A stretch of DNA of 58,392 bases from Macrostomum lignano. Taxonomy: Eukaryota. Below are positions 7,553-53,325 of this stretch, piece after piece. The position numbers and the translations under genes are program-made. Within the stretch, counting starts at the first letter, position 1. Each line of letters begins with the position of its first letter. The notes under the pieces were generated by a model. The model did no database searches. It had not been told where the DNA came from and was given only the letters and a program-made list of their open reading frames with translations. The DNA lies in assembly GCA_002269645.1 (NCBI GenBank), contig NIVC01001050.1:1-58392 (forward strand), given 5' to 3'.

Positions 7553-8520
7553 TGTTTAAAGTTCCAGCTCCTGTCTAGAGAGTAATGTTTAATTATCGGG
7601 TGTTTAAAGTTCCAGCTCCTGTCTAGAGAATAATGTGTAATTATCGGGTGTTTAAAGTTCCAGCTCCTGTCTAGAGAGTAATGTGTAATTATCGGGTGTT
7701 TAAAGTTCCAGCTCCTGTCTAGAGAGTAATGTGTAATTATCGGGAGTTTAAAGTTCCAGCTCCTGTCTAGAGAGTAATGTTTAATTATCGGGTGTTTAAA
7801 GTTCCAGCTCCTGTCTAGAGAGTAATGTTTAATTATCGGGTGTTTAAAGTTCCAGCTCCTGTCTAGAGAATAATGTGTAATTATCGGGTGTTTAAAGTTC
7901 CAGCTCCTGTCTAGAGAGTAATGTTTAATTATCGGGTGTTTAAAGTTCCAGCTCCTGTCTAGAGAGTAATGTTTAATTATCGGGTGTTTAAAGTTCCAGC
8001 TCCTGTCTAGAGAGTGATGTGTAATTATCGGGTGTTTAAAGTTCCAGCTCCTGTCTAGAGAATAATGTGTAATTATCGGGTGTTTAAAGTTCCAGCTCCT
8101 GTCTAGAGAGTAATGTTTAATTATCGGGTGTTTAAAGTTCCAGCTCCTGTCTAGAGAGTGATGTGTAATTATCGGGTGTTTAAAGTTCCAGCTCCTGTCT
8201 AGAGAGTGATGTGTAATTATCGGGTGTTTAAAGTTCCAGCTCCTGTCTAGAGAGTGATGTGTAATTATCGGGTGTTTAAAGTTCCAGCTCCTGTCTAGAG
8301 AGTGATGTGTAATTATCGGGTGTTTAAAGTTCCAGCTCCTGTCTAGAGAGTGATGTGTAATTATCGGGTGTTTAAAGTGCCAGCGGTTATCTAGGGAGTA
8401 ATTATCGTCCGTTTTTAAATTCCACCTCTTATCTAGGGAGTAATTATCGTCTAAAATTCCAGCACTTGTCTAGGGAGTTTAAAATACGTCTAGGTATCTA
8501 GATGTCTAGGTGTTAAAATA
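7553..8520. repeat. 48-bp tandem array (~17 near-perfect units plus degenerate 3' units)
   Basis: Unit TTTAAAGTTCCAGCTCCTGTCTAGAGAGTAATGTTTAATTATCGGGTG repeats head-to-tail from ~7553 to ~8380, then decays to ~8520. Stop codons occur in all three + frames. Confidence 0.95.
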
Positions 8521-10819: not shown

Positions 10820-12690
<1,871 letters not shown>

Positions 12691-23115: not shown

Positions 23116-24244
23116 ACATATGCGAATTCTAACATGAACTAGGGCTTCTTTATTCTCACCTCTAGCAAATGTTGTCGACCGATGATGAGAATGAAACGCG
23201 GCACCTACGGGTCTTGATATGTTGTGAATATGTACTTTATACAGATATTTGAAATGTAAAGAGTTTACGAAGCTTAAAAGCTTTAGCTATACTGCACCTG
23301 TAACTGGGGGTTGTTCTGCTTCGAAATCGCTTTCTTTTGTCCAGCGACTGCGTGCTTCTGCTCTGAAATGAGTGGCGGTTGGCTGGTCGGCCATTCTTCT
23401 TCTACTTCTGCTTTCGCATTTCACTTTAACTCTGTAAAAATTACCTCACTTTGAAGAATTTGGCGATTGTTTGCATAAAGGACTACAACTATTTCTACTG
23501 GAATTTCTACCATTCACGAGTGTAATGTCCTTTCCTGAGTTGTTAAGCAGTCCTTGGCTTGCATTTCAGGACTAGAAAGCAAGTTTGAAATTAGAAAAAA
23601 ACTCTTTACTTAAAGGCTCGTTTGCACGGCCATCAACTAAGGCCAGCATATCTGAAATCACACGAAATTTGAAAAACACAATGTATAACACGAAATTTTT
23701 ACATTGGTGACCGGATTTGTTGGCTTATTCAGACTCAAATAGACTCAAACATGTGGACACCCTGCGCCTTGTAGGTTGATACTCCGCTCCCTTTATAATA
23801 TCTTACACGATGGGCTTACCGAAAAGCAACCCTCGGCCGTTGAGTCTTCACTGACAGCAGCTGATGGTACCGAAATGAGAAGCTGGTTATGCTTCTGAAG
23901 CTGGGCCATTTTAAGCGAAAATTGGACAATTCATCTAAACTGTGACACTGAAATTTGTAAATTATAAAGTATCAATACGAGCAATTGACGATTGGTTCTT
24001 AGAATATTGACGAATCACTCACTTTGAAACCAGAATGGTTTAGTAAATGTTAGTAACAGTAGTATAGTTGCAGTGTGAGCATCGTAAAATACTGTAAATT
24101 GGTGTTGAGTATGTTGTAATTTCTAATAACTCTACGATGCTCAATCACGCTGGTGCATGTACTTTTAAAATTGAGTACATATAAGGCTGTCAAAAAGACA
24201 CCATAATGTTCATTTAGTTCAATAAATTTCGACATACTATAAAC

Positions 24245-25066: not shown

Positions 25067-25837
25067 TTAGTTAAAGGGAGAAATACATTCGCACAGCACT
25101 CCAAATCCTTTAAAGGCAAAATCACTTGCAGCTTCATTGAAGTCCACTAGACCAGGAAAAGCGGTTCCAAATATTGCGACAGCATTTTCACCTCCATAGT
25201 TGTCTGGCTGGCGAGAGCTCCACAGACTTTTGTCCAAGGCAATGTTGCAGGCGACCCAGTACCAACCTTCTCCAGGCTCCAGACTGCCAGGTTTTTGGTA
25301 CCCACCAAGCCAGAACTGACCTCCAGGGCAATATGTCTTGTACATGATGTTCACTCTGCTCATCTCTGTGGTGTCAGTAACATCCGCCATAATCACCAGA
25401 CCGCTCTCCGACTCACATTTCTGTCTACTCATCGACCAGTTCCTTGAACCGAAGTGCAGCCTGTACTTTGCTCCGCACAGGTCGTCTCCGTAGCCAGACG
25501 GACACAGCGCGCCCGCCTCGAGTCCCGGCTGCTGCTTCACAAACACCCGGCCTCTCCTGGAGCAGCCGCAGTCCCTCACCGACTTGCTGCACTTGTCGAA
25601 CACGAACAGCTGGCACGGACCGTCAGCCAGGCTGAACGCCTGGCAGCGCCGGTTTCTGGTGCACAGAGCCGCACATTTAATTTTGTTTGTTATATTTGAG
25701 TGAATGTCCGTATAGATGCTTTTTACGCACAAACTGCCGTGAATCGAGTGAAACTCTTGCTCGTTGAAGCCAGTTGTCAAAAACTGATCACAGAGTATAA
25801 ACTGAATTAGCAATGTGATTTGTAAGCTCGAAAACAT
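25067..25837 (-). CDS. Secreted PAN/apple-domain + C-type lectin-domain protein, single exon, 256 aa
   Basis: Hydrophobic signal-like N-terminus; PAN-like CAALCTRNRRCQAFS...CQL; CTLD motifs WSMSRQKC, FWLGG, WYW, WSSRQPDN, VLCE. Confidence 0.85.
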   Translation of the reverse strand: MFSSLQITLLIQFILCDQFLTTGFNEQEFHSIHGSLCVKSIYTDIHSNITNKIKCAALCTRNRRCQAFSLADGPCQLFVFDKCSKSVRDCGCSRRGRVFVKQQPGLEAGALCPSGYGDDLCGAKYRLHFGSRNWSMSRQKCESESGLVIMADVTDTTEMSRVNIMYKTYCPGGQFWLGGYQKPGSLEPGEGWYWVACNIALDKSLWSSRQPDNYGGENAVAIFGTAFPGLVDFNEAASDFAFKGFGVLCECISPFN

Positions 25838-26196: not shown

Positions 26197-26480
26197 CACG
26201 GCTCTAGGCAAACTTTTTACCTTAAGGCCCAGATAAAAAATCCAGCTCATGCCTGCGAGCCAGATACGAGACTTAAGGAGAAGGATTGGAGGAGAGATAA
26301 GAGGCGAGAGAAAAGATAAAAGGATAGGAGGGAAGAGCTAGAGAAGAGAGAAGATTGGAAAGAGAAGAGAGCTGAGTTGAGACATAAGCCAATTAAGCAA
26401 GCCTTAGTACTTCAGGGCCCGATAGAGAGGCTTGGTGGGTCACATGTGGCCCGCGGGCCGAAGTTTGCTGACCAACTCTG
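26197..26480. mobile_element. Degraded non-autonomous hAT-like element
   Basis: Left end GGCAAACTTTTT...GGCCCAGAT and right end GTGGCCCGCGGGCCGAAGTTTGCTGACC resemble the GGCAAAC/GTTTGCC termini and GGCCCGCGGGCC subterminal motif of small hAT elements. The interior is purine-rich filler. Confidence 0.5.
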
Positions 26481-26764
26481 ACTCGAGAGAAGTGCTGAAA
26501 TTTGAAAAGTCAAACGTTCCATTTTTTAGATCGTAACAGTTACGCATTGTATCTAGAAATAATACGTAAAGTATTAAAATGTGTTGAAGAAACATTCGTG
26601 AGACAGTGTGCTTGTGCTGCGTTGTGCATATGGTTTTGACATGGACGATGATTAATTTAAGTCACTCGTGGCTTCACCACTCGTGAAAAATGAATACCTC
26701 CATGTTAGTTCCTCATAGCATACAAAAAACCACGGAACGAGCAGAACCTAGACTAGGACACAAT

Positions 26765-27055
26765 TTCCAAGAAAAGGACGCTTATATCACATTAATATTG
26801 CAGAGATTTCTAGGAATCAGAATAAGAGTACTTCTGTTGGAATTTCTTGGAAATATTTGCCTACCATGTAAGTTAGATATCAAAGTGTACTTGCTAAGCT
26901 TTCAACTGCATCAGACGTTTGACTATCGTATAGTTGATACACTGTTCGCGAATTCACTTCTTATCAAAATTAAAAAAACTTGCATTCAAACATCACGCAA
27001 GCAACATGTCAGTAGAAACAGTTCGCGAAAGTCTGCAGAAATTTATTTCTAGGAA
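26765..27055. promoter_or_regulatory. Cluster of four STAT/GAS-type palindromes (TTCYNRGAA) upstream of Mx copy 1
   Basis: TTCCAAGAA 26765-73, TTCTAGGAA 26808-16, TTCTTGGAA 26844-52, TTCTAGGAA 27047-55. The motifs are seen directly; function is inferred. Confidence 0.55.
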
Positions 27056-27385
27056 ATTTGAGAGCTTTTCTTGGTATGCACATTTTAGATCTACGCTCTT
27101 TCGCGCATGTACACTTATGAGCGGAGTGTATAGTGTAGCTATACTGATAAAAAATACGCTGATCAAAAACGTACACTCTAAAAAAAACGTGCAATGATGT
27201 TTCAGTGCACAGATGCGAGTGTATATATGTACGCTTTCCTGCCCACTGTTCTTATTCTCACTGCATTTTTAGGGTTTATACATTTTACCCACTCATAATT
27301 TCGTCGAATTTAACTTTGAATTTCAAAAACTCTATTAAGTTTTGCGATTCTGTACAGTTGACATCATAGCTCGTATCAACCTCAA

Positions 27386-30300
27386 ATGTCATCGCAGAGT
27401 TCGTCACACCATTCGTCAAGTTCGTCAAAGTCAAGTTCGTCGTCAAAAAAGAGGGTATTACTACTACTTCTACTACTACTACTGCTGCTATTATTACTAT
27501 TATTAATACTACTACCATTACTATTACCGAAAGTACGAACATACTTCTACTCCCACAGCAGCACAAGTCCTCTGATGGCCCGACCCCGGCGAAACAGGTC
27601 AAGAGCCCCGATGCCACTGAGACTGTGTTGCTAAGCGCTGCTGCAGACGCCTCCAAGACGTTCACTCCAGCGCTCAGTCAGCAGTATCGCGAGCGAATCC
27701 GGCCAGTGCTGAACAGCATCGATCGTCTCCGGTCGCACGGCCTACAAAATGAGCTCCGCCTGCCCACAGTAGCCGTTGTGGGCGACCAATCGGTAGGCAA
27801 ATCCAGCGTGCTGGAGGCCATCTCGGGCGTGGACTTGCCGCGCGGTACCGGCATTGTGACTCGCTGCCCGCTGCAGCTGAGCATGCGCTCAAAGCCGACT
27901 GGAGACTGGACTGGTAGGATTAGGTGAGCATTTTTATTCTATTAATTCACGTCCTTCGAACTCCTTTCTGAATTTACATTAAATACACATAAAAATATCT
28001 TGCAAATATTAGCAAATTTTGACAGATTTGACAGCGCGGGTATTTGTCTTGCTAAAAAACATTTTCTCAATTACACTGCATGATATGAAATACCAGCAAT
28101 GAGGCTATTCTGCCCTTTCTACTGACCCCTGAGTACATACAAGAGCGCCAGTAATGTACACAGGCACGCGACTCCCACACACTCACACAAGGTGCACAGG
28201 GGCCCCGCACGGACAACCAACTGGCCAATATTTGTCCCAAATGAATGTGGCCGCACAGGCCCGAAATGAACTAGCTTCCTTTCTGCTGAAAACTAGCAGG
28301 CACTTTAGATTGAAATGAAAAATCAAAGTTGAAAAGTAAAGGGGATGTGAACTTAAGAGTCAAAATGGAGCCCGAAACATTCTGTCCCGGTTTCTCTACG
28401 CCAATCCCTTCATTTGGAGCCAAACAGCTGCCGTTATGCCGAAAACCCGGCCACTTTAGCATTTGAGGATCCCTATGAGGAGAAATGGGATTAATGGGGA
28501 AGAATTCATGTAAACTTCAGGTTCCAGAATGGAGCATGAAGCATTGGGTCCCGGTTTCTCTACGCCAATGCCTTCATTTGGAGCTTCAAACGCTTAAAAA
28601 ACGAGATGACCATGATATACGCTCCCCTTTTGGCACTTTTCATGTTTGTACGAAGAATAGGAGCGATAGTAATGTTATGTCATGCCCCCATTATGTTGTT
28701 TCTTAATAATGTTTATGTTATCTTCCCCACCCCAGCTCTCGTCAAGGGGGGTTTGTATCACACATATTAGACCGACGATTTCTACCTCGACGAAGTGGAG
28801 GTTAACCCGAAGTTTTGAGACGGAGGGTGGTAAACATCATTTTCGCACATTTATATCGTGTCAAAGGTGCAAAGCTTCCCCACAACCATTTCTCCCCATA
28901 GAGATCCCCAAATGCTAAAGTGTTCGGGTTTTCGCATGACGGCAGCTTTTTGGCTCCAAATGAAGGGATTGGCGTAGAAAAATCAGGACCGAATGTTTCG
29001 AACTCCATTTTGACTCTTAAGTTCACATCCCCTTTGTAAACTGCTGCTGGGCAGCACATCATTTGCCTTCGTCGAGAAAACGTTCTTCCAGTACTCCAGG
29101 CTGCAAAATTACAAAGATACGTGGGTTAAAGTATTTCAAAAGTCATTCCAATGTCTTCAAAGTTAACCAGCTGTAATTTCACAAGTGTCGTTTCCTGCTC
29201 TCCTAAGAGCCTTTTCTGACAAGACACCCTTCCAACCCCCGACAACAGCTACCAAAATCGCAAGGGCGAGCACGTCGAGCGTGAAATATCGAAAAAATGT
29301 GAAGTCGACGAAATGGTGCGCAAAGTACAAAACGAAATCACTGGCGACTCGAACGGCGTATCTACGGAGCAGATCGACCTGACCATTGAGAGCGCGGATG
29401 TGTCCGACCTCACCCTGGTTGACCTGCCCGGCATTGCCAGGTACTCTGAGAAGAATCCGAAGATCAACGAGGTCACCAAGCAGCTGATTCTGTCTTACAT
29501 CAGCCAGGACCAGGTGATCATCCTGGTTGTTGTACCCTGCAGCGTGGACATCGAGACAGTGGAGGCCATTGCTCTAGCCAAACAGGTGGACCCAGGGGGC
29601 ACCAGGACGATCGGAGTCCTGACTTGCCCGGACCTGACCAACCCTGGCAGCGAGGAGGACATCAAAGCCATCGTCAACAACCAAGGCAGAGTGCGACTGC
29701 ACAAAGGCTTTGTCATGGTGAAATGCCGCAGCCCCAAGGAGCTCAGGAACAACATTAGTCTGAGCGAGGTGGCCAAAATCGAGGAGGATTATTTCAGAAA
29801 CGATCCGCACTTCAGCCAGCTGCCAAAGGATATTGTTGGCACAAAGACGCTGGCAGAGAAGCTGACAAATGAGTTGTTCAAGGCAGTGGCTGCGGGCATT
29901 GAGACTCTGGAGGAGAGTCTGAAGGTAAGCCGACTGAGAAAGTCAGCTCCACGGGGGAGTTGGCGAACTTCGGTCCTCAAAGCCTTTCCATCCGGCCTTT
30001 AAATACTTTAAATACTTTATATGCGATCCCGCCCACTCAAAGTTTATGTATTTTCTCAGCTCTTTTCTCCTCTCTCCCCTCTTCTCTTCACTCTCCCCTC
30101 TTCTCTCCACTCTCCCCTCTTCTCTCCTCTCTCCCCTATTTTCTCTTTCCTCTCTCTTTCCTCTCTTTTCTTTTTTACTCTCTCCCTCCTGTCACCTCTA
30201 ATCGACTAATCCTGTCTTCTGATCGTATCTCTCTTATCAGGTCTTCTCTTTTTTCCTCTCTCCTCTTGTCCTCTGTGTAACAGGTAGGATTTTGTGTCCA

Positions 30301-32352
30301 TCCTGCCTGCACCTTCTGCTCACGTCGGATAACAAAGAATTGAACTCGAAGCACGGTTTTTCTGGGCCCAGGCTGCTGCGGCCTACAGCCCAGCCGAGGC
30401 AATGGCCATGCCTTTAGGCCCGCAGATGCGGGCGAGAGGAAAGTGAAGCGAGCGCCTCCACTGTCTCTCCTTTTTATTTAAAACATAAGCATACGCTTAT
30501 GTTACATAGAAAAAATGAAAATTGCGCAGTAGTTTAGGTGCAGCCGTCCTTTGCAAATATGACTGCATTTTATGCAGCTCATACTCTGGTTAAAGAAGTT
30601 TGCTGCCCTTAGTCAGCGGATATGCATTCAAACAGAATAGCAGTTTACTTTTTCATTACGTAATATATAAGACTTGATGTGGCTGAATGCTTTCAGGTCA
30701 GATTTCTATTTGGCGCTTGTTTTTATGTGCCCATGCGTGCTTAGGGTCAATCGAATGTATACGTCATCGTTTTGATTTGACAGCTCGCAAACTGAACTAA
30801 ATTAAAAAATTTATTTCTCACAGAGCAAGCTGAAGGACTACGAAGAGGAGCTGAAAGACCTGGAGGACAGTCTGTGCGAGACAGACAGCGACAAGAGAGC
30901 CTACCTGATGCGCAAGCTGCAGCAGTTTGCCTCAAAAGTACACGCCGCCACGGCCAGTCCAGAAGACGAGCGGGACGCATTCGCCACGGGCAGCTCCAGC
31001 AGTCTGTACAGCAGCTGTCTGACTAATTGTTCGAGCTTTGGCTACCTTGTGAGTAATAGCCAGCCTGGTGAGTTGTTTATTCATTACGAGTTTCCTGGCG
31101 CACGGGGCGCTTCTATGCGAAATATAGATTTTAGTTGTAAATACTTGTAACAACCATGTATCATAATCGGCGACTTTTTTAGCACAAAGTCCATACACAT
31201 TATAAAATTTCATTCTTTATGCTAAACTGGCCACGCGAACTCGACGTTGCTTGACGTCCATGACAAACTTTCTATTTCAGACTGGATCATTGACTACTCG
31301 AAAAGCCTACCCAATTATGTGTCCGACGAGGTGCAACTTAGAAGAGGACGCGAGCTTCCAACTTTCACATTTGTGTTCCCTGTTGTTCAGAAGATTGTAT
31401 TCGAAGAATATTTGCCAGAAGTAGAAAACCTGGCGAAGTGGCTACTCGGTGAGGTGCAGTTTCAAGTTACTAAATCGCTTGAAAACCTGACCGAAAATTG
31501 TTTCAAAGCGTTTCCAAGGCTGCTGCTACTTGTGAAAGAAACTGTTGTCAAGGCGATCGAAGCCCAAGAGGCTGAGTGTCGTGCAGACCTGGCTAAGCTG
31601 ATCGCACACGAGCGTCGCTTGTTCACTCAGGACAGTCAGTTTTTGGAAAAACTGCGTTACGTTACAGAGCAACAAAAGGAGTTTCTGGCTAAGCAACCTG
31701 TTCCTCCGTAAGTAACTGATTTAATTGGGCGTTTACCGAAGGATTTTAGGAGCTGACGCCCCTTGTTCCTGGCACCCAAAGAAGCGTCCCTAGCTACTAC
31801 GAAACTCCTGGCTATGCCTCTCACATTTGGATCTAAAAACACTACAAATGGAATAGTTATTATATATCCAATTTAAAAGAGGAGGTTCCGTTTTTCAGCC
31901 CAACCCTTTTTTCGGGTTTCGGAGTCGCGGCAGCATCACAGCCGATCCGAATCTCTCGCGAGCCTCAAGCAAGCCCAACCACAAGGGCGTCTCAAGGGGG
32001 CTTCAAGAGAGCCGAGCCTCAAGTGAGCCGAGCCTCAAGCGAGCCGTCACATGAGGAGCAAATTCGCCTGGGAACCAAAGCCTACCTGCTGCTGGCCTGT
32101 CAGCGCATCTCGGACACGGTGCCAATGTCCGTGCTGTGCCACATGCTCGACGGCGTGGCCACAAAGCTGGTTGCCGAGATAACCCGACTGTTTGCCGGCG
32201 GCAGCCACCAGGTGGAGATCCTGGATCTGCTGCGAGAGAAGGAGGGCAGGCAGCGGAGGAGGCGCTACCTGATTCAGGCTGCTTGTCAGATGCGCGAGTC
32301 CCGGAAGGAGCTGCAGAGCGCCAAGCAGAACCGCATGCTGCTGGAGGACTGA
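27386..32352 (+). CDS. Mx: Mx-like dynamin-family GTPase, copy 1 (744 aa); exons 27386-27454, 27559-27923, 29249-29924, 30824-31067, 31281-31707, 31899-32352
   Basis: [16 protein letters not shown] (BSE), G1 GDQSVGKS, Mx signature [14 protein letters not shown]3 DLPG, G4 variant TCPD, stalk RGRELP...FTQD, and [19 protein letters not shown]...LLREKE. No PH or PRD domain. All splice phases are consistent with an open frame. Confidence 0.9.
28338..29035. mobile_element. MITE with ~150-bp terminal inverted repeats in Mx1 intron 2
   Basis: AAAGGGGATGTGAACTTAAGAGTCAAAATGGAG...GAGAAATGG (28338-28487) is the reverse complement of CCATTTCTC...CTCCATTTTGACTCTTAAGTTCACATCCCCTTT (~28876-29035). Non-coding. 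Confidence 0.8.
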
Positions 32353-33933: not shown

Positions 33934-34073
<140 letters not shown>

Positions 34074-34178
34074 TACACTTAGGCATACTGATGCCACCCT
34101 TCGTAACATGTCAGTAGTACGAAGGGTGCACATGAAACTAGCTCTTACTGCGAGAAAAAAAGCACAGAAAAAACAGGT

Positions 34179-34187
34179 TTCCAGGAA
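34179..34187. promoter_or_regulatory. GAS-type site TTCCAGGAA ~300 bp upstream of the Mx2 ATG
   Basis: Exact palindrome; the same site occurs at 41323-41331 before Mx3. Confidence 0.35.
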
Positions 34188-34483
34188 ATAGTTCACACGC
34201 ACATCTGCAGGAATCTTTTGGAAATTTTTGGCGCAGTTCATTATACGAGCGTATGTACATGGATGAAAAGGGTGTACAGTTTATCATTATCGTTCCCTGT
34301 AGAAATTCCAACGGACAGTGGTGTATCAGTGCTTAAATGGGAGTGTGAATATGCACTGTACTGCCCGTTGTTCTTATTCAAAATATTTTGCCCTGCCGGC
34401 AATTTGTTTTCTCTGACTTTGAGTTCCGAAAACGCAACTCATTTTTTGGATTCTGTATAGCAGACGTACTATACAAACCTGAA

Positions 34484-39491
<5,008 letters not shown>

Positions 39492-41084: not shown

Positions 41085-41217
<133 letters not shown>

Positions 41218-41734
41218 TACACTTAGGCATACTGATGCCACCCTTCGTAACATGTCAGTAGTACGAAGGGTGCACATGAAACTAGCTCTTACTGCGAGAA
41301 AAAAAGCACAGAAAAAACAGGTTTCCAGGAAATAGTTCACACGCACATCTGCAGGAATTTTTTGGAAATTTTTGGCGCAGTTCATTATACGAGCGTATGT
41401 ACATGGATGAAAAGGGTGTGCAGTTTATCATTATCGTTCCCTGTAGAAATTCCAACGGACAGTGGTGTATCAGTGCTTAAATGGGAGTGTGAATATGCAC
41501 TGTACTGCCCGTTGTTCTTATTCAAAATATTTTGCCCTGCCGGCAATTTGTTTTCTCTGACTTTGAGTTTCGAAAACGCAACTCATTTTTTGGATTCTGT
41601 ATAGCAGACGTACTATACAAGCCTGAAATGTCATCGCGGAGTTCGCCAAATTTGTCGTCAAACAAGCGGGTAAATCATTTTTGTAGTGCTTAGCCATAAA
41701 ATTTCCCGCGCTACATTTCAGTAAAAGACTACTA

Positions 41735-43260
<1,526 letters not shown>

Positions 43261-44076
43261 GCAGTACAAACAATACTACCTTTTCTCCCACAGCAGCACA
43301 AGTCCTCTGATGGCCCGACCCCGGCGAAACAGGTCAAGAGCCCTGATGCCACTGAGACTGTGTCGCTAAGCGCTGCTGCAGACGCCTCCAAGACGTTCAC
43401 TCCAGCGCTCAGTCAGCAGTATCGCGAGCGAATCCGGCCAGTGCTGAACAGCATCGATCGTCTCCGGTCGCACGGCCTACAAAATGAGCTCCGCCTGCCC
43501 ACAGTAGCCGTTGTGGGCGACCAATCGGTGGGCAAATCCAGCGTGCTGGAGGCCATCTCGGGCGTGGACTTGCCGCGCGGTAGCGGCATTGTGACTCGCT
43601 GCCCGCTGCAGCTGAGCATGCGCTCAAAGCCAACTGGAGACTGGACTGGTAGGATTAGGTGAGCATTTTTATAGTTCTATCAATTCACCTTCTTAGAACT
43701 CCTTTCTGAATTGACATTAAATGCACATAAAAAATATCTTGCAAATATTAGCAAATTTTGACAGATTTGACAGCGCGGGTATTTGTCTTGCTAAAAAACA
43801 TTTTCTCAATTACACTGCATGATATGAAATACCAGCAATGAGGCTATTCTGCCCTTTCTACTGACCCCTGAGTACATACAAGAGCGCCAGTAATGTACAC
43901 AGGCACGCAACTCCCACACACTCACACAAGGTGCACAGGGGCCCCGCACGGACAACCAACTGGCCAATATTTGTCCCAAATGAATGTGGCCGCACAGGCC
44001 CGAAATGAACTAGCTTCCTTTCTGCTGAAAACTAGCAGGCACTTTAGATTGAAATGAAAAATCAAAGTTGAAAAGT

Positions 44077-44811
44077 AAAGGGGATGTGAACTTGGGATTC
44101 AAAAATGGAGCCCGAAACATTCTGTCCCGGTTTCTCTACGCCAATCCCTTCATTTGGAGCCAAAAAGCTGCCGTTATGCCGAAAACCCGGCCAGTTTAGC
44201 ATTTGAGGATCCCTATGAGGAGAAATGGGATTAATGGGGAAGAATTCATGTGAAGTTCAGGTTCCAGAATGGAGCATGAAGCATTGGGTCCCGGTTTCTC
44301 TACGCCAATGCCTTCATTTGGAGCTTCAAACGCTTAAAAAACGAGATGACCATGATATACGCTCCCTTTTTGGCACTTTTCATGTTTGTACGAAGAATAG
44401 GAGCGATAGTAATGTTATGTCATGCCCCCAACATGTTGTTTCTTAATAATGCCTGTGTTATCTTCCCCACCTCAGCTCTCATTGTGTTCCCCCGTTTTGC
44501 TGGAGACTTAAATAGCGTCAAGGGGGGTTTGTATCACACATATTAGACCGACGATTTCTACCTCGACGAAGTGGAGGTTAACCCGAAGTTTTGAGACGGA
44601 GGGTGGTAAACATCATTTTCGCACATTTATATCGTGTCAAAGGTGCAAAGCTTCCCCACAACCATTTCTCCCCATAGAGATCCCCAAATGCTAAAGTGTT
44701 CGGGTTTTCGCATGACGGCAGCTTTTTGGCTCCAAATGAAGGGATTGGCGTAGAAAAATCAGGACCGAATGTTTCGAACTCCATTTTGACTCTTAAGTTC
44801 ACATCCCCTTT
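44077..44811. mobile_element. Same MITE in Mx3 intron 2
   Basis: Same TIRs at the orthologous position. Confidence 0.8.
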
Positions 44812-46585
44812 GTAAACTGCTGCTGGGCAGCACATCATTTGCCTTCGTCGAGAAAACGTTCTTCCAGTACTCCAGGCTGCAAAATTACAAAGATACGTGG
44901 GTTAAGGTATTTCAAAAGTCATTCCAATGTCTTCAAAGTTAACCAGCTGTAATTTCACAAGTGTCGTTTCCTTCTCTCCTAAGAGCCTTTTCTGACAAGA
45001 CACCCTTCCAACCCCCGACAACAGCTACCAAAATCGCAAGGGCGAGCACGTCGAGCGTGAAATATCGAAAAAATGTGAAGTAGACGAAATGGTGCGCAAA
45101 GTACAAAACGAAATCACTGGCGACTCGAACGGCGTATCTACGGAGCAGATCGACCTGACCATTGAGAGCGCGGATGTGTCTGACCTCACTCTGGTTGACC
45201 TGCCCGGCATTGCCAGGTACTCTGAGAAGAATCCGAAGATCAACGAGGTTACCAAGCAGCTGATTCTGTCTTACATCAGCCAGGACCAGGTGATCATCCT
45301 GGTTGTTGTACCCTGCAGCGTGGACATCGAGACAGTGGAGGCCATTGCTCTAGCCAAACAGGTGGACCCAGGGGGCACCAGGACGATCGGAGTCCTGACT
45401 TGCCCGGACCTGACCAACCCTGGCAGCGAGGAGGACATCAAAGCCATCGTCAACAACCAAGGCAGAGTGCGACTGCACAAAGGCTTTGTCATGGTGAAAT
45501 GCCGCAGCCCCAAGGAGCTCAGGAACAACATTAGTCTGAGCGAGGTGGCCAAAATCGAGGAGGATTATTTCAAAAACGATCCGCACTTCAGCCAGCTGCC
45601 AAAGGATATTGTTGGCACAAAGACGCTGGCAGAGAAGCTGACAAATGAGTTGTTCAAGGCAGTGGCTGCGGGCATTGCGACTTTGGAGGAGAGTCTGAAG
45701 GTAAGCCAACTGAGAAAGTCAGCTCCACGGGGGAGTTGGCGAACTTCGGTCCTCAAAGCCTTTCCATTCGGCCTTTAAATACTTTAAATACTTTATATGC
45801 AATCCGGCCCACTCAAGGTTTATGTATTTTCTCAGCTCTTCTCCACTCTCCCTTCTTCTCTTCACTCTCCCATATTTTCTCTTTCCTCTCTCTTCCCTCT
45901 CTTTTCTTTTTTACTCTCTCCCTCCTATCACCTATAATCAACTAATCCTGTCTCTTCTGATATAAGACTTGATGTGGCTGAATGCTTTCAGGTCAGATTT
46001 CTATTTGGCGCTTGTTTTCTTTTGCGCATGCGTGCTTAGGGTCAACCGAATGTACACGTAATCGTTTTGATTTGACAGCTCGCAAACTGAACTAAATTAA
46101 AAAATTTATTTCTCACAGAGCAAGCTGAAGGACTACGAAGAGGAGCTGAAAGACCTGGAGGACAGTCTGTGCGAGACAGACAGCGACAAGAGAGCCTACC
46201 TGATGCGCAAGCTGCAGCAGTTTGCCTCAAAAGTACACGCCGCCACGGCCAGTCCAGAAGATGAGCGGGACGCATTCGCCACGGGCAGCTCCAGCAGTCT
46301 GTACAGCAGCTGTCTGACTAATTGTTCGAGCTTTGGCTACTCTGTGAGCAGGAGCCAGCCTGGTGAGCTGTTTATTGATTACGAGTTTACTGGCGCACGG
46401 GGCGCTTCTATGCGAAATATAGATTTTAGTTGTAAATACTTGTAACACATACTTGTAACATTAAATACTTGTAACAAGCTTGTATCGTAATCGTCGATTT
46501 TAATCTTGCTTTTGTTTTAGCACAAAATCCATGCACAGTTTAAAAAATGTTTCACTTTATGCTAAACTCGTCGTTGCTTGACGTC

Positions 46586-49500
46586 TGATGTGGATGGACT
46601 CTTATTAGTATATCCATGTCTATGGCCCTGACCTCCACCGCCTACGTGCTAAGAGGCAGGGCGATTAAATATTGTTTTAAGCTCCTTGGCTCGCCACCAG
46701 AGCAGCCCAAATTACATTATACCAAAGCATATAACATGGCATCGCAAGCAGGCACTGAAACCGTGGGCTAAAGCTTCTGGCAAAGAAACCACAAGATACC
46801 CCCAAAGCAGCAGCGCTCTACGTCGGCATCGCCTTCAAGGCAGAAGCCAGAAAAGTCGGAACGATCATCAGCAGCATCAGCAGCATCATCAGCAGCATAC
46901 TCTTGAGGCATACTTCGATTCAGTTAGCATCCAGCACGAGGAATCAGACAGCATCCACGTAACTCGGAAGAAAATGGCAGCTCGACGAGCTTGCATGTTG
47001 AACGCAGTTACATCTGCTACCTTCTCGAAGTATAAGAATCTACCTCTGACGGATCAACAATTCAAGGACCCAGAGATTGTCATGAATTTCATCAGAGATC
47101 ACGTACTCGGACAGGTTAATATCATCGTAGAGAGGAACAGGTTCTGGAAACGGCAACAAAATGACGGAGAAAATTTTAACGACTGTCATGCAATTGAGGG
47201 ACCTGATGCGAACATGTAAGTTCTGTAAGCATTCCAACGACCTACTGAGGGATAAAATTGTGCTATGAGTACGAAATCCGGAGACAATCAAGCATCTATT
47301 AGCACAACCAGATCTCTCTCTCTCGCTGACGCGCTGACAATATGTAGATCAGAGGAAGCCTGTGAGATCCAAAAAATGAAATCTGCACAGCTTCACAGGT
47401 GTCCATAGTGCGCAAACACCGAGGAAAAACTCCAGGTGGGGCTCGATCAAAGACTCCAGAAGCAAAGAAATGCACTGCCTGTGGTAAAGGGCGACATCAG
47501 CGCTCAGAATGTCCCGCCAAGGACAAGAAGTGCTTTAACTGCGGTCGCATTGGACATTTTGGTTCCATGTGCCGGTCCAGTCGCAGCACTGGTCATCCGG
47601 ATAAAAGGCGACCACCGAGAATCTCAACTTTGGTTTCTACACTGGAACCCGCAACCCCAACAGTAGTAGTCTCGATAAATGGGGAGCAGCTGGAAATGAT
47701 GCCCGATACGGGATCCAATATCGATCCAATCCGAGAATGCGATTGCAAAAAGCTCCGCATCCGTGTTGCACAACTAAGGCATGACGCCATATTTCCTAAA
47801 TCAGCCAGTGGACAGTTCATTAAGAGTGACGGCAATTTCTCCGCCACAATAACGCTGAACGGGAAGCACGCAGCGACAAGGATGTGCTGAAGAACTTGGT
47901 CGCGCCAGTGCTGTCCTGGCAGAGCTGTAGAAAACTGGGAATCATCCCTAAAGAGTTTCCAAGTCAGATAAACCAGATAACTCAGGTTCTGACGAATGAC
48001 GGAAGAAAACATACAGAACTGGATTTGATCCAAGAATTCCCGAGGGTCTTCGACGGAGTAATTCGGCCGATGAAGGGCGAAAAATTTTCGATTGTGCTCA
48101 AAATAGGACGCGATCCCATTTTCCGTGAAGACGCCACGCCGGCTATCACTGCCACTGCATGAAAAACTTAAAAACGAACTCGATGCCTTGGAAAGACAGC
48201 AAATTATCTGCAAAATAACAGAGCCGACACCCTGGTGCGCTCCAATAGTCGTAGCCCCGAAGAAGGGCACTGACCGAATTCGTCTTTGCGTAGATTTTAG
48301 AGAGATAAACAAATACGTTCTGAGACCTCGATACTAATCACCAACACCACTGGAAGTTGTGGCCAGCACCAATGTATCCAACGCAGAATGGTTTACAGTT
48401 GTTGATGCATTGAAAGGATCCCATCAAGTACCACTCCACGAAGACAGTATGCCACTGACAACATTTATTACTCCTTATGGAACATACATGTTCAGAATGG
48501 CACCTTTCGGGATCAGCTCTATCTCAGAATATTACAACAGGAGACTGGATAGTGTTCTACAGGGCTTGAAAGATACTCGCCACATTGTGGATGACTGCAT
48601 AATCGCAAGCGCCGACTACGAAAGCCAAATCCAAGCTGTTCGCGAATTTATTTATCGGTGTGACGAGAGTGGAATATCATTGAATAAGAAAAAATTTGTC
48701 TTCGCCAAGAAAAATGTAAAGTTTGCTGGATTTATCCTTACACTAAAGTGCTATCAGGTGGACCCTGACATGACAGCAGCCATTGCTCAATTCCCTGAGC
48801 CATCAAATGTTACAGAATTACGCGCATTTATGGGCCTAGTGAATCAAATAGGACCATTCACAGATTCGATCGCAGAATGTACCTCGATATTAAGACCTCT
48901 ACTGAGCGCGAAGAATTAATTCATCTGGAACGAGGAGCACCAAAAAGCCTTCGATAAGGCACGAATCCATCTGTCTAAAGTCCCATCATTCGCATACTAC
49001 GATCACACGAAGCCAACCGCACTGCACACCGACGCATCAAGGTTGAAGGGACTCGGATTTGTTCTCAAGCAGCAACAACCTGACGGCGCCTGGCGAATGA
49101 TTCAGGCAGGATCACGGTTTCTGGCTGACGCGGAGACGCCGAAGATCGAGCTCGGGGAAGATCGAGCTCGAGTTTCTAGCAATTGTGTGGGCTTCGCAAA
49201 AATGGACTCTCTTGTTTTTTAAGGACTCGATTCATTTCAAATCGTGACTGACCACAAGCCACTTATTCCGATATTAAACGGCTACCAACTAGACCAAATC
49301 GAAAACCCGAGGTTGCAGCGCCTTCGTGCCAAGCTTAATCGCTACAACTATGAAGCAAAATGGGTACGAGGTAAAGACAATGTATATGCCGATGCACTAT
49401 CAAGAGCTCCGATTGCAAATGCAACTGAAGAAGATCAGATTGATGAGAATCAAGCTCTAAGTAGTGTGAATTTGTTGACTATGGTAATGGAAGATAGGGA

Positions 49501-51017
49501 AATTGACTTTAACATGAAGAGAATACAAGAACACGTAAAGAAGGACACAGAAATGCAAGAGCTTATCCAAGTAATAGAGAATGGATTCCCGAACGATAAA
49601 GCTAATCTTCCAGTTAATCTAAGACCGTACTGGCACATTAGACATAAGCTTGTCGTCTAAAACGGAGTCGTTCTCAATGGATGCCGTTGTATCATCCCTA
49701 AAGAAATGCGAAAAGAAGTTTTGAGAACACTACATTCAAGTCACCAAGGTGCTACTAAGACCAAAGCAAGAGCAAGAATGGTCGTCTATTGGCCCAGCAT
49801 GGAACGTCAGATCGATGACACAATAAAGCAATGCAAAGCATGCCAAGAAACCCGTCCAAGTCAGGTCAGAGAACCGATGTTGCCGAGAACTACACCAGCA
49901 AGGTGCTTCCAGGAAGTTCATGCTGACTTTTGTGAACACCGCGGCAGGCAATTCCTAATGATAGTGGACGGATACTCTGGATGGATCAACATATGGAACT
50001 TCGGACAAAATGCTCCGGTTTACAAGCTGATTAACGCGTGCCGTGAGCTATTTTGTCAGACAGCTGTACCGGAATTGTTCTGGTCAGACTCAGGTCCTCA
50101 GTTCGAGGCCAGCGCATTTGGTAACTTTTTGAAGAGATGGGAGTCGAGTCCAGATTCTCATCCCCATACCACCACCAAAGCAACGGGAGAGCCGAAGCGG
50201 CAGTCAAGTCAGCCAAAAAGATCATCAGAGGATCGTGGGATTATCGCAACAATGACATAAACAAGGACAAAATGGCGGAAGGAATACTTATCTATAGAAA
50301 CACACCTATGTATGACGGACGCATTCCTTCTATTATGCTGTATGGACACCCAGCAAGAGAGATTCACTCCTGCTCATCGAAGAAGCTTTAATCCCGAATG
50401 GTACAACACGATTAAACAAATGGAGGACACAGCATCAGAAGTTCACGAGGCTGTGGAGCAAACAAGTCCAAGAGAAGCCTCGATGGAATCCGAATAGGGT
50501 CGACTGTAGTTCTTCAAGAGCCAACAACGAAACTGTGGCAACGGAGAGGAGTAGTGGTAGAGGTCGGAAAAACACCGCGACTACCTGGTAAAGTTGGCGA
50601 GCGGCAGAATACTACGGAGAAACCGCATTTACATACGGCCAACATTGCCACTGACCGCCGACAACTGGAAAATGACAAAGACGACAAACGGCGAAAGTAC
50701 AAGACGTACGGAGACGACTTGTACTACGACGGCCAATCAACCAAGCAAGGAGAAACCTCGAAGTAGCTCGAGAGCAACGAAGGGCATCCCGCCCGCCCGA
50801 CTCCAGTACAGTAGGCTAGGACATCCAAAAGTTAATTTTGTCGAGTGATAAGGACACTGAATTGAAAGGGGAGATGATGTGGATCGACTCTTATTAGTAT
50901 ATCCATGTCTATGGCCCTGACCTCCACCGCCTACGTGCTAAGAGGCAGGGCGATTAAATATATTGTTTTAAGCTCCTTGGCTCGCCACCAGAGCAGCCCA
51001 AATTACATTATATAACA
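46586..51017 (+). mobile_element. Ty3/Gypsy LTR retrotransposon, full-length but frameshifted; LTRs 46586-46736 and 50875-51017, TSD ACGTC
   Basis: TG...CA LTRs; ACGTC at 46581-85 and 51018-22; PBS-like TGGCATCGC after the 5' LTR; PPT GAAAGGGGAGA before the 3' LTR. Gag has two CCHC knuckles (CTACGKGRHQRSEC, CFNCGRIGHFGSMC). Protease DTG, RT (VDALKG...PFGI...IVDD), RNase H (HTDAS, TDHKPL) and integrase (HSSHQG..CKAC, HADF, SDSGPQF, SNGRAE) follow in PR-RT-RH-IN order, with multiple stops and frameshifts. Confidence 0.95.
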
Positions 51018-53325
51018 ACGTCCATGGAAAACTCTCTATTTCAGCCTGGATCATTGACTACTCGAAAAGCGTACCCAATTATGTGTCGGACGAGGTGCAG
51101 CTTAGAAGAGGACGCGAGCTTCCGACTTTCACATTTGTGTTCCCTGTTGTTCAAAAGATTGTATTCGAAGAATATTTGCCAAAAATAGAGAACCTGGCGA
51201 AGTGGCTACTCGATAACGTGCAGTCTAAAGTTACTAAAACGCTTGAAAACCTGGCCGAAAATTGTTTCAAAGCGTTTCCAAGGCTGCTGCTACTTGTGAA
51301 AGAAACTGTTGTCAAGGCGATCGAAGCCCAAGAGGCTGAGTGTCGGACAGATATGGCTAAGCTTATTGCACACGAGCGTCGCTTGTTCACTCAGGACAGC
51401 CAGTTTTCGGAAAAACTGAGTTACGTTACTACACAATGGCAGGAGTTCCTAGCGACACATCGTACTCCTCAGTAAATAATTGCTTTGAATAGGCATGGTG
51501 CCTTCGGACCTGGAGCCCGTTGGTGCAGCAATGTAAAATTCAGTCCATCCTAATACAAGATCCTTAACCATTTCTTGCAGGCGGCTGCCAGCACAAGCCG
51601 CCTCAAGCGACCCATCAAACGAGGAGCGAATTCGCCTGGGAACCAAAGCCTACCTGCTGCTGGCCTGTCAGCGCATCTCGGACACGGTGCCAATGTCGGT
51701 GCTGTGCCACATGCTCGACGGCGTGGCCACAAAGCTGGTTGCCGAGATAACCCGACTGTTTGCCGGCGGCAGCCACCAGGTGGACATCCTGGATCTGCTG
51801 CGAGAGAAGGAGGGCAGGCAGCGGAGGAGGCGCTACCTGACTCAGGCTGCTTGTCAGATGCGCGAGTCCGGAAGGAGCTGCAGAGCGCCAAGCAGAACCG
51901 CATGCTGCTGGAGGACTGAGACAAGCGCCTCTATTTGAGATGAAAAATGGAAGACTGTTCATGCGAACACGAATTTACCTAAATTTATTTTAACTATCTT
52001 TGAAGTGACCACAACTAATACGAGTATACCTTTGAACGGAGACTAACAAAAGTACTTTTGAATGGTAGCTACATGCCACCTCGACCCCGACTGAACAATT
52101 TGATACTTTAGAAATAACCCTGACGACCCCAACTACAAGCGTATCTCGGAACTCTTAAACTCTGGTGGAACGGAAAACTTTATTAGAAATGTCTCAAAAA
52201 ATACCCGAAAATGTTTATCAACTACTTACAGTACTCCTATTCATCTGCTTGTATCCATTTATAACCAGTTTTTAACCAAGTCTTGTAAGCTTTGACGAAG
52301 TTTACAACAGCATCAATTTTTTCTTGTTTTGTCACAGCCTCAGTTTTAATTAGTATTGCATAAATTCCATTTCGCAAAAAATTTGGTAAGTAGTCGTAAT
52401 AAATGACCCTACAAGCATGATCGGAATCTTTTTAGTCATAAATGTTTAATTAAAATTCGCACTTGAGCACATTCTCTTCTCTTTCCTACTTAAAGTAGCC
52501 GCTTATAGAAGATAATGAAATTAATTATCGCTAAAACAAAATCTGATCAATTTTAAATTATTAATAAATACACTTACTTCAGTTTTGCGATAGTTGCGCA
52601 TATGTCCGAGGATCCCGAAATTATGGTATGAAAAGCTATTGTTATCATTAGTTATTTCCCTCAAAATTTAGGGCTAGTTTTTTATTCAAGCTACGAACGC
52701 CAACTGGAAGCAAGCAAGTACAAAGTACAAAAATAGACGCTAGGCTAGACATGAATTGCTTTATTGTCACGGCAATTCTACGGTTTTTCCATGGATTTTC
52801 CGACACAAAGTTCCCTTTTCTGCCGACAACTGAGTGCATTGCAACAATATTGGCATGTTGTACTAAGGTATATCAAAATTCAGGTATGCGCTCGTAATTT
52901 TTGCTTGCGACAATTTTGGACAGTCTTCGATAAGTAACGCATAAAAAAGACAGGCTTAGATACACAAGAATTCAACTGCAATTGATAGTTGGTGTATTTA
53001 CAAATTTTACAGATCCTATGATGAAGCATAAAAAGCAGCTGCGCTTGTATGGGGCCAATTGTTAAATGTCTTTAAAAAAACTTTTTTTCTGAATAAATAT
53101 CGCATTATAAAAAATGAAATTTACAATAAATTACGGAATTAAAAACATCCGAATCGAAATGCATCTGTACACATGATCGTTTTGCTCGGTGGAGCAGCAT
53201 GACGAACCATAAATACATTCATGGCTACTATTAGACATGGATTCGCATTGATATCTAGAAAAAATATCTACAAAGAATATTCGTGCTTTCTGTCTTTGTT
53301 TCGTAGCTGATAGTTCAGCGCCTAG

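What the first reader, a model, noticed from the sequence alone, without database searches (positions are those of the whole stretch)
26765..27055. Four STAT5-type GAS palindromes clustered in 290 bp upstream of an invertebrate Mx gene
Seen: TTCCAAGAA, TTCTAGGAA, TTCTTGGAA and TTCTAGGAA all fit TTCYNRGAA, and Mx2/Mx3 each keep one TTCCAGGAA ~300 bp before the ATG. A rough estimate for TTCNNNGAA in AT-rich DNA is about 0.1 per 300 bp, so four is striking. Isolated copies do occur elsewhere (1329, 5952, 6687, 49907), so only the clustering is informative. Established: TTC-N3-GAA is the STAT dimer site; vertebrate Mx is a JAK-STAT/interferon target, mainly via ISRE. Inference: an interferon-independent, STAT-homodimer-driven antiviral Mx circuit, with copies differing in site number and so in inducibility.
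Basis: partly seen in the sequence, partly recalled or inferred. Interest (0 to 1): 0.8.

Follow-up and report, generated by a model that had tools for sequence, protein, structure and literature searches.

The report
STAT-type palindromes upstream of flatworm Mx genes
Four STAT-type palindromic DNA motifs do sit just upstream of an Mx-like antiviral GTPase gene of the flatworm Macrostomum lignano, and the same 12-base motif recurs only in front of related Mx genes, so it is probably a real regulatory element, although which protein binds it is untested.

Summary
TTCCAAGAA, TTCTAGGAA, TTCTTGGAA and TTCTAGGAA lie at 26765, 26808, 26844 and 27047, 339-621 bp upstream of the ATG (27386) of the first of three tandem Mx-like genes. 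The window is Macrostomum lignano, a free-living flatworm. On its own the cluster is only moderately unusual (scan P about 0.014). Three sites share a longer palindrome, TTTCYWGGAAAT. In 128 kb of M. lignano DNA this 12-mer occurs seven times. All seven lie within 700 bp upstream of Mx-like start codons. Two lie before an unalignable paralog with 58% protein identity, and one of those is a 16-base match placed 27 bp before a TATA box. The palindrome, not the GGAA half-site, is the recurring unit. No ISRE or kappa-B site is present. The best reading is a real dimer-binding cis-element of STAT (GAS) type that controls some flatworm Mx genes. This fits planarian data in which stat5 and mx1 rise together in the dsRNA response. 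A STAT gene in M. lignano, its binding, and inducibility could not be tested. The Mx2/3 site is not a retained ortholog of an Mx1 site. This is a new member of a known kind and of moderate interest.

The parts
26763..26774 (-). Site 1: TTCCAAGAA (26765-26773). On the minus strand it reads as the 12-mer TTTCTTGGAAAT.
26806..26816 (.). Site 2: ATTTCTAGGAA, core TTCTAGGAA at 26808-26816. The 3' flank is TC, so it is not a full 12-mer.
26839..26854 (+). Site 3 within the composite 16-mer GGAATTTCTTGGAAAT (core TTCTTGGAA at 26844-26852). The 16-mer is identical to L002 9850-9865 upstream of a 58% paralog. It overlaps AGAAATTCCA on the minus strand.
27046..27057 (+). Site 4: TTTCTAGGAAAT (core at 27047-27055), 339 bp before the ATG and about 165 bp before the TATA-like box.
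27300..27308 (.). Fifth TTCN3GAA (TTCGTCGAA). It does not fit YNR and lies between the TATA-like box and the ATG. It is changed to TTCGTCTAA in L001, so it is probably not part of the element family.
27222..27228 (+). TATA-like TATATAT, 158 bp before the ATG. It lies in the stretch that is 71-75% alignable with the Mx2/3 proximal promoter.
   Evidence: read from sequence; the transcription start site is not known
27386..32352 (+). Mx1: an Mx-like dynamin-family GTPase gene. Exon 1 runs from 27386 to about 27452. Intron 1 holds an (ACT)n repeat. The GED exon ends at 32352.
   Evidence: the ATG is the same as in NCBI gene BOX15_Mlig021727g2
34178..34189 (+). Mx2 perfect 12-mer TTTCCAGGAAAT, 305 bp before the ATG at 34484.
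34210..34225 (+). Mx2 degenerate copy of the 16-mer, GGAATCTTTTGGAAAT (14 of 16). In Mx3 it is GGAATTTTTTGGAAAT. It aligns opposite Mx1 site 4.
34301..34310 (+). AGAAATTCCA in the Mx2 promoter. This is the only 10-mer shared by the Mx1, Mx2 and L002 promoters. The Mx3 copy is at 41445-41454.
34484..39491 (+). Mx2: second tandem copy, 97-98% identical to Mx1 from intron 1 onward.
41322..41333 (+). Mx3 12-mer TTTCCAGGAAAT. It is a duplicate of the Mx2 site, because the promoters are 97% identical.
41628..51919 (+). Mx3: third copy. A Gypsy-type LTR retroelement (about 46450-51017) interrupts it after the exon at 46116-46409.

Best explanation
The four palindromes belong to a real, recurrent cis-regulatory element with consensus TTTCYWGGAAAT, a GAS-type inverted repeat TTC-N3-GAA with conserved flanks. 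It marks the promoters of a subset of Mx-like GTPase genes in Macrostomum lignano. The most likely mechanism is as follows. A dimeric transcription factor that reads the two half-sites together binds these sites and couples Mx transcription to an infection or dsRNA signal. That factor is most probably the flatworm STAT5-like protein, which would dimerise through SH2-phosphotyrosine contacts. Vertebrate Mx genes instead use the ISRE/ISGF3 route. Mx1 carries a distal triplet (26765-26852) plus one proximal site (27047). Mx2/3 carry one perfect and one decayed site. The L002 paralog carries one distal site and one site 27 bp before its TATA box. Shown here: the motif, its restriction to Mx promoters in the DNA available, its palindromic unit, and the lack of ISRE and kappa-B sites. 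Inferred: the identity of the binding factor, the upstream signal (RLR to an unknown kinase, JAK uncertain), the direction of regulation (activation or baseline repression), and any effect of site number on expression.
For: (1) The 12-mer occurs 5 times in the window against 0.12 expected, with 0 of 100 shuffles reaching 5. All five lie 305-623 bp before Mx ATGs. (2) Independent test. I derived the 12-mer from the window sites and then scanned L002-L004 (70.3 kb). It gave 2 hits. Both are upstream of the Mx paralog P0005 (58% identity to my stitched Mx1 query), at -657 and -147 from its ATG. Expected in the three 700-bp upstream stretches is 0.0023, giving P(2 or more) about 2.5e-6. That promoter does not align with the window. 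(3) The proximal L002 site shares an exact 16-mer, GGAATTTCTTGGAAAT, with Mx1 site 3. Its last base is 27 bp before TATAAAAG. (4) The palindrome is the unit. Six of 8 GGAAAT in the three independent promoters have TTC at N3 spacing, against 3 of 73 elsewhere (Fisher P 7e-6). This argues for a dimer rather than a monomeric GGAA reader. (5) Mx1 and Mx2 hold perfect sites at neighbouring but non-orthologous positions, each opposite a decayed partner. This pattern fits binding-site turnover under selection. (6) No GAAANNGAAA and no GGGRNWYYCC occur within 1 kb upstream of any of the five Mx-like genes. (7) TTCYNRGAA is the STAT5-type optimum (own knowledge). (8) In the planarian S. mediterranea, a STAT5A/Stat92E-like transcript and mx1 are co-upregulated in a PRLR1 (RLR)-dependent dsRNA response (PMC8797187). 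M. lignano has RLR homologs (PMC8476169). STAT-like motifs are enriched upstream of virus- or poly(I:C)-induced genes in C. elegans and Nematostella.
Against: No STAT or JAK gene was verified for M. lignano. A 2026 survey did not detect STAT in Platyhelminthes. The planarian homolog is weak (E 6e-12 to human STAT5A). Two other paralogs, L003 and L004, have no TTCN3GAA within 2.9 kb and 9.6 kb upstream. Mx loci of an annelid, a chiton and an abalone show no 12-mer and no cluster. Only about 128 kb of M. lignano DNA could be scanned, so the genome-wide frequency is unknown. The 97% copy L001 keeps all four sites, but at that identity this says nothing. Transcription start sites are unknown. The 27-34 bp gaps between sites 1, 2 and 3 are wider than the tandem-GAS spacing used by STAT tetramers (own knowledge). 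Part of the conserved 16-mer lies outside the GAS core (GGAAT at its 5' end), so another factor or a second factor may be involved.
Confidence: 0.5

Rival explanations
1. The element is real, but a factor other than STAT reads it. Candidates are a Rel-homology (NF-kappaB/NFAT-like) protein, an ETS-family protein, a BCL6-like repressor that competes for TTCNNNGAA, or a flatworm-specific dimer. The resemblance to GAS would then be coincidental or convergent.
For: The only 10-mer shared by the Mx1, Mx2 and L002 promoters is AGAAATTCCA. From memory it resembles the Rel/NFAT CD28RE core. It occurs apart from the palindrome in Mx2 (34301). The conserved 16-mer extends 5 bases beyond the GAS core. 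The degenerate Mx2/3 copies keep both GGAA motifs but lose TTC. Two ETS-like ORFs lie in the same window. The presence of STAT in flatworms is disputed.
Against: The TTC partner at exact N3 spacing accompanies GGAAAT in 6 of 8 promoter cases against 3 of 73 elsewhere. That is the signature of a palindrome-reading dimer of STAT type. No canonical kappa-B site (GGGRNWYYCC) is present. GGAAAT is a poor ETS core, which prefers GGAAGT (own knowledge). The ETS hit is below Pfam's cutoff.
Confidence: 0.25
2. The cluster is a chance aggregation in AT-rich intergenic DNA and has no regulatory role.
For: The within-window scan P for TTCN3GAA is only 0.014. Per-window Poisson probabilities of 4e-6 to 2.4e-5 imply several such clusters in a genome of hundreds of Mb. 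The motif class was picked after reading the sequence. The L003 and L004 paralogs and non-flatworm Mx loci lack it.
Against: The extended 12-mer recurs in an unalignable paralog promoter at P about 2.5e-6. A 16-mer identity sits next to a TATA box. The palindrome is specific relative to the half-site. Perfect sites are kept at different positions in Mx1 and Mx2.
Confidence: 0.15
3. The sites are fragments of a dispersed repeat or transposon, for example terminal inverted repeats. Their presence near Mx genes would then reflect insertions and not selection.
For: Sites 1 and 3 form a 21-nt, 81% inverted repeat with arms 68 bp apart. The genome is rich in repeats and microsatellites. The locus carries an LTR element.
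Against: There is no second copy of the 110-bp unit or of any flank in 150 kb. Similarity between copies stops at 12-16 bp. No target-site duplication is evident (read from sequence). Sites 2 and 4, the Mx2 site and the L002 sites have unrelated flanks.
Confidence: 0.1

Closest known systems
Mammalian STAT5 GAS elements, such as the beta-casein site and the CISH promoter with four TTCNNNGAA boxes (own knowledge, not re-checked here)
   Same: They share the TTCYNRGAA palindrome. TTCTAGGAA and TTCTTGGAA are classic STAT5 sites. Several sites lie within a few hundred bp upstream of the regulated gene.
   Different: The factor and its activating kinase are unknown here. Gaps between sites are 27-34 bp, not the short tandem spacing used by STAT5 tetramers. 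The conserved flanks (TTTC...GAAAT and a 5' GGAAT) go beyond the mammalian core.
Vertebrate Mx promoters (ISRE bound by ISGF3 after type I/III interferon)
   Same: The target gene family is the same: an Mx-like dynamin GTPase closest to human MxA/MxB. The presumed antiviral context is also the same.
   Different: No ISRE core occurs within 1 kb upstream of any of the five flatworm Mx-like genes. The salient motif is GAS-like. No interferon is known in flatworms.
Planarian dsRNA response (S. mediterranea adar1/2 RNAi; PMC8797187)
   Same: It is in the same phylum. mx1 and a STAT5-like gene rise together downstream of an RLR homolog. The authors propose STAT signalling as the mediator.
   Different: That work gives no promoter or binding-site data. 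This window gives candidate sites but no expression data. The species is different (Macrostomorpha, not Tricladida).
JAK-less STAT control of antiviral genes in C. elegans (STA-1; PMC5587905)
   Same: STAT-like motifs lie upstream of virus-response genes in an animal without interferon and without JAK. A non-JAK kinase (SID-3) acts upstream.
   Different: STA-1 is a constitutive repressor, and the enriched motif there is ISRE-like (TTCNNTTT), not a TTC-N3-GAA palindrome. Nematodes have no Mx target.
Insect STAT92E targets, such as the vir-1 and Socs36E site clusters (own knowledge), and the cnidarian poly(I:C) regulon with STAT/IRF/NF-kB/ETS motif enrichment (PMC8476169)
   Same: They show interferon-independent use of TTCNNNGAA-type sites at infection-responsive genes, and clustered sites.
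   Different: The target genes differ. A JAK (Hopscotch) and cytokine receptors are established in insects, and neither is established for flatworms.

Membership tests
GAS-type STAT-binding element | Inverted repeat TTC-N3-GAA | tested here: met
   Four exact matches at 26765, 26808, 26844 and 27047. The paralog sites are L002 9345 and 9855.
GAS-type STAT-binding element | STAT5-type preference TTCYNRGAA | tested here: met
   All four Mx1 sites, the Mx2/3 site and both L002 sites fit it.
GAS-type STAT-binding element | Both half-sites are required, so the unit is a dimer site and not a lone GGAA/GAA | tested here: met
   Six of 8 promoter GGAAAT have TTC at N3 spacing, against 3 of 73 elsewhere, P 7e-6. 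This is a sequence statistic, not a binding assay.
GAS-type STAT-binding element | Position in the promoter or enhancer of a responsive gene | tested here: inconclusive
   The sites lie 339-621 bp before the Mx1 ATG. The core of the L002 proximal site ends 28 bp before a TATA box and starts 146 bp before the ATG. Transcription start sites and responsiveness are unknown.
GAS-type STAT-binding element | A STAT protein is encoded by the organism | not testable with these tools
   The M. lignano genome cannot be searched here. The search with the published planarian stat5 N-terminus found nothing. The literature conflicts (against 45).
GAS-type STAT-binding element | Binding by an activated STAT dimer and signal-dependent transcription | not testable with these tools
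   This needs EMSA, ChIP or DAP-seq, plus induction experiments.
Mx subfamily of dynamin-like GTPases | Dynamin-type G domain, middle domain and GED | tested here: met
   Pfam Dynamin_N, Dynamin_M and GED on the exon ORFs. The annotated 743-aa protein P0002 has the same domains.
Mx subfamily of dynamin-like GTPases | Closer to Mx than to classical dynamins, Drp1 or OPA1 | tested here: met
   Human MxA and MxB give E 6e-78 to 4e-75. The best dynamin gives 1e-39. Outside Macrostomum, most of the best-scoring database relatives carry Mx names. No phylogeny was built.
Mx subfamily of dynamin-like GTPases | No PH domain and no proline-rich domain | tested here: met
   Only Dynamin_N, Dynamin_M, GED and a faint MMR_HSR1 are recorded for P0002. 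The stretch between the middle domain and the GED is a short low-complexity loop (sequence).
Mx subfamily of dynamin-like GTPases | Antiviral activity and induction by infection | not tested
   There is only indirect support: planarian mx1 is induced in the dsRNA response.
ISRE-driven Mx promoter (vertebrate type) | ISRE core GAAANNGAAA(S) in the proximal promoter | tested here: not met
   There are no matches within 1 kb upstream of Mx1, Mx2, L002 gene 1, L003 or L004.

The most novel reading that the evidence does not exclude
Flatworms, a phylum in which JAK/STAT is reported as undetected or only weakly recognisable, run an interferon-free, ISG-like antiviral programme. In it, an expanded Mx gene family is switched through a conserved GAS-like palindrome, TTTCYWGGAAAT. 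Site turnover among paralogs would tune each copy's response.
Probability: 0.3. Interest if true: 0.65.

Novelty: new member of a known kind. Interest (0 to 1): 0.45.

Why it matters
Mx is a hallmark interferon-stimulated gene, yet Mx-like genes exist in animals without interferon, and how they are controlled there is largely unknown. This locus gives a concrete candidate element: a 12-bp palindrome, in one case placed next to a TATA box. It lies in M. lignano, described in 2021 as the only flatworm with stable transgenesis (PMC8717057 and PMC5730564). The question of what drove ISG-like genes before interferon could therefore be tested directly with promoter reporters and RNAi. The same experiments would settle whether flatworms have a working STAT axis. 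The idea itself, STAT-type sites at invertebrate antiviral genes, already has precedents in insects, nematodes, cnidarians and molluscs.

Tried and rejected
- A homolog search with one Mx exon found only one distant hit. The stitched protein was needed to identify the species.
- Attempt to verify a flatworm STAT: the paper's supplement holds only the first roughly 390 nt of planarian stat5. Searching its 115-aa N-terminus found nothing.
- Look-ups of the upstream 256-aa ORF and of Macrostomum proteins P0004, P0008 and P0013 returned 'not on record'. P0007 turned out to be a transcript contig without a promoter.
- The Rfam scan of the window found nothing.
- The sigma-70 and terminator scan is irrelevant to a eukaryote and was ignored.
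- The 120-aa ORF 26690-27052 that covers the cluster was rejected as coding. The 97% copy L001 differs by 1-bp, 6-bp and 56-bp indels that break the frame.
- Conservation of the four sites in L001 was rejected as evidence, because the copies are 97-98% identical overall.
- My first impression was that Mx1 site 4 is the positional ortholog of the Mx2 site. I revised this after the four-way alignment.
- Mx loci of Owenia, Liolophura and Haliotis show no 12-mer and no comparable cluster. There is therefore no support for a pan-lophotrochozoan element.
- Schistosome kinome papers gave no usable statement on JAK.

Full report
**1. What is there**

The window contains 32 TTCN3GAA against 19.3 ± 4.2 expected from dinucleotide shuffles. 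Four of them lie at 26765 (TTCCAAGAA), 26808 (TTCTAGGAA), 26844 (TTCTTGGAA) and 27047 (TTCTAGGAA). All four fit TTCYNRGAA.

I placed the observed 32 sites at random in the window. The chance that any span of 282 bp or less holds four or more is 0.014. For the 15 TTCYNRGAA sites it is 0.0005, but that pattern was chosen after the fact. By itself the cluster is suggestive only, because a whole genome would hold several like it by chance.

**2. Context**

The gene downstream starts at ATG 27386. Its exon ORFs carry Dynamin_N, Dynamin_M and GED domains. The stitched protein matches human MxA and MxB at E 6e-78 to 4e-75, against 1e-39 for the best dynamin.

[quoted passage not shown] Most of the next relatives outside the genus carry Mx names, from annelid, chiton, amphioxus and fish records.

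The window holds three tandem copies:
- Mx1 spans 27386-32352.
- Mx2 spans 34484-39491.
- Mx3 starts at 41628 and is interrupted after 46409 by a Gypsy-type retroelement.

From an (ACT)n microsatellite in intron 1 onward (27456), Mx1 is 96-97% identical to Mx2/3. The proximal promoter and exon 1 (27186-27419) are only 71-75% identical, and nothing further upstream aligns. Sites 1-3 therefore lie in Mx1-specific sequence.

Upstream, on the other strand, is an unannotated 256-aa ORF (25067-25837) with no Pfam hit. If it is a gene, the 1.5-kb intergenic region would be shared.

**3. Not coding and not a repeat**

The 120-aa ORF that covers the cluster is broken by indels in the 97-98% copy L001, which is contig NIVC01001310.1 of assembly GCA_002269645.1.

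Within 26400-27400 only 11-13 nt units recur. The one exception is a 21-nt, 81% inverted repeat that joins sites 1 and 3. No other copy of the region occurs in the window or in the paralog loci.

**4. The longer motif and an independent test**

Three of the four sites (site 1 on the minus strand, and sites 3 and 4), together with the Mx2/3 site, share the 12-mer TTTCYWGGAAAT. In the window it occurs five times against 0.12 expected, and 0 of 100 shuffles reach five.

I then fetched three loci that carry more distant M. lignano Mx paralogs: L002 (58% identity), L003 and L004 (52-54%). In these 70.3 kb the 12-mer occurs twice. Both hits lie upstream of the first L002 gene, at -657 and -147 from its ATG.

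The expected number in the three 700-bp upstream stretches is 0.0023, so P(2 or more) is about 2.5e-6. The L002 promoter does not align with the window.

The L002 proximal site is part of an exact 16-mer, GGAATTTCTTGGAAAT, that it shares with Mx1 site 3. The 16-mer ends 27 bp before TATAAAAG.

L003 and L004 have no TTCN3GAA within 2.9 kb and 9.6 kb upstream. The promoter of the second L002 gene lies outside the fetched DNA. So three of the five promoters that could be assessed carry the element.

**5. The unit is the palindrome**

In the three independent promoters, 6 of 8 GGAAAT are preceded by TTC at N3 spacing. A seventh has N4 spacing and the eighth is a decayed copy. Elsewhere in the 128 kb only 3 of 73 GGAAAT have that partner (Fisher P 7e-6). 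This fits a factor that reads two half-sites as a dimer, as STATs do. It does not fit a monomeric GGAA reader.

**6. Turnover, not retention**

L001 keeps a 56-bp segment that the window has lost between sites 3 and 4. That segment is homologous to the Mx2 promoter.

The four-way alignment places Mx1 site 4 opposite a degenerate Mx2 element, GGAATCTTTTGGAAAT (34210-34225). In Mx3 the same element reads GGAATTTTTTGGAAAT. The alignment places the perfect Mx2 site (34178-34189) opposite non-palindromic Mx1 sequence.

Each promoter thus keeps one perfect palindrome at a different but neighbouring position. This pattern is expected from binding-site turnover under selection. The alignment is in diverged DNA and is not certain.

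**7. Other motifs**

No ISRE core (GAAANNGAAA) and no kappa-B consensus (GGGRNWYYCC) occurs within 1 kb upstream of any of the five Mx-like genes.

The only 10-mer shared by the Mx1, Mx2 and L002 promoters is AGAAATTCCA. In Mx1 and L002 it overlaps the palindrome. In Mx2 it stands alone at 34301. From memory it resembles a Rel/NFAT-type site, which keeps open a second or alternative factor.

**8. The trans side**

I could not search the M. lignano genome for STAT or JAK.

- Literature for: in the planarian S. mediterranea, a transcript with E 6e-12 to human STAT5A (1e-9 to Stat92E) and an mx1 homolog are co-upregulated after adar1/2 RNAi. The response depends on the RLR homolog PRLR1, and the authors suggest STAT signalling (PMC8797187).
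- Also for: M. lignano has RLR homologs (PMC8476169).
- Literature against: a 2026 survey did not detect STAT in Platyhelminthes and is inconsistent about JAK (PMC13203501).
- My own attempt: a search with the published 115-aa planarian stat5 N-terminus found nothing.

There are precedents for STAT-like motifs at antiviral genes in animals without interferon. In C. elegans, STA-1 has no JAK, acts as a repressor, and has SID-3 kinase upstream (PMC5587905). In Nematostella, promoters of poly(I:C)-induced genes are enriched for such motifs. Insect vir-1 and Socs36E are further examples (own knowledge).

**9. Wider conservation**

Mx loci of Owenia fusiformis, Liolophura sinensis and Haliotis rufescens contain no 12-mer and no comparable cluster. 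Only the CDS start is known in those loci, so this is weak negative evidence.

**10. Verdict**

The sites are very probably a genuine cis-element family tied to some flatworm Mx genes, and its grammar is that of a STAT5-type GAS.

Several points are inferred and untested:
- that a STAT binds the sites;
- that the circuit is antiviral and inducible rather than, for example, constitutively repressed;
- that site number sets the response.

I give about 0.5 to the STAT reading, 0.25 to another factor, 0.15 to chance and 0.1 to a repeat origin. It is a new member of a known kind and of moderate interest. It is readily testable because M. lignano can be made transgenic.

Noticed in passing
window 27456-27530, 34598-35106, 41742-43260: Intron 1 of the three Mx copies holds an (ACT)n microsatellite of very different length: about 75 bp, 509 bp and 1519 bp. 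Identity between Mx1 and Mx2/3 jumps from about 72% to 96-97% exactly at this repeat, which suggests a gene-conversion or recombination boundary.
   Followed up: partly
window 33934-34073 and 41086-41217; L003 about 9355-9430: A (CAGA)n/(GACA)n microsatellite sits 410-600 bp upstream of the ATG of Mx2, of Mx3 and of the distant paralog in L003. This could be coincidence in a microsatellite-rich genome or a shared promoter feature.
   Followed up: no
window 46450-51017: A Gypsy-type LTR retroelement (RT at 48359-48919, integrase at 49706-50260) interrupts Mx3. The 3' exons that follow (51018-52382) are only 92-93% identical to Mx1/2. The same insertion is present in L001, which has one fewer full Mx copy than the window.
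   Followed up: partly
window 26838-26847(-), 34301-34310, 41445-41454, 23499-23508(-); L002 9849-9858(-): AGAAATTCCA is the only 10-mer common to the three independent Mx promoters. There are 4 in the window against 0.2 expected. It may be a second, Rel/NFAT-like element.
   Followed up: partly
L003 8563-8909: Four TTCN4GAA lie within 340 bp, 1.1-1.4 kb upstream of an Mx paralog that lacks N3 sites. They include TTTCTTCAGAAAT and TTCCCCGGAA. They could be 4n-spaced STAT-type sites or chance.
   Followed up: no
window 3541-5988 (-): An 815-aa single ORF has a P-loop and weak AAA_22, NACHT and nSTAND3 hits, all below cutoff. It may be a STAND/NLR-like immune gene. TTCTAGGAA (5952) and TTCCAAGAA (6687) lie at or just upstream of its 5' end.
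   Followed up: partly
window 53564-53887 (-) and 56782-57075 (-): Two tandem ORFs resemble the C-terminal part of an ETS domain. One scores 22.7 bits against Pfam Ets, below the cutoff. The other has no Pfam hit.
   Followed up: partly
window 25067-25837 (-): A 256-aa ORF, read by eye as having a signal-peptide-like start and cysteine-rich, C-type-lectin-like motifs, is transcribed divergently from Mx1. It has no Pfam hit and is not annotated in the NCBI record. If it is a real gene, it shares the intergenic region that holds the palindromes.
   Followed up: partly
window 27015 / L001 9574-9625: The window lacks a 56-bp promoter segment that is present in L001 and homologous to the Mx2 promoter. 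This indel changes the spacing between sites 3 and 4 from 264 to 203 bp.
   Followed up: yes
window 7553-8478 and 11381-12353: There are long tandem arrays: one with about 48-bp periodicity, and one of short units that reads as a (TCTA/TCTG)-type array, seen as IYLS repeats in translation.
   Followed up: no
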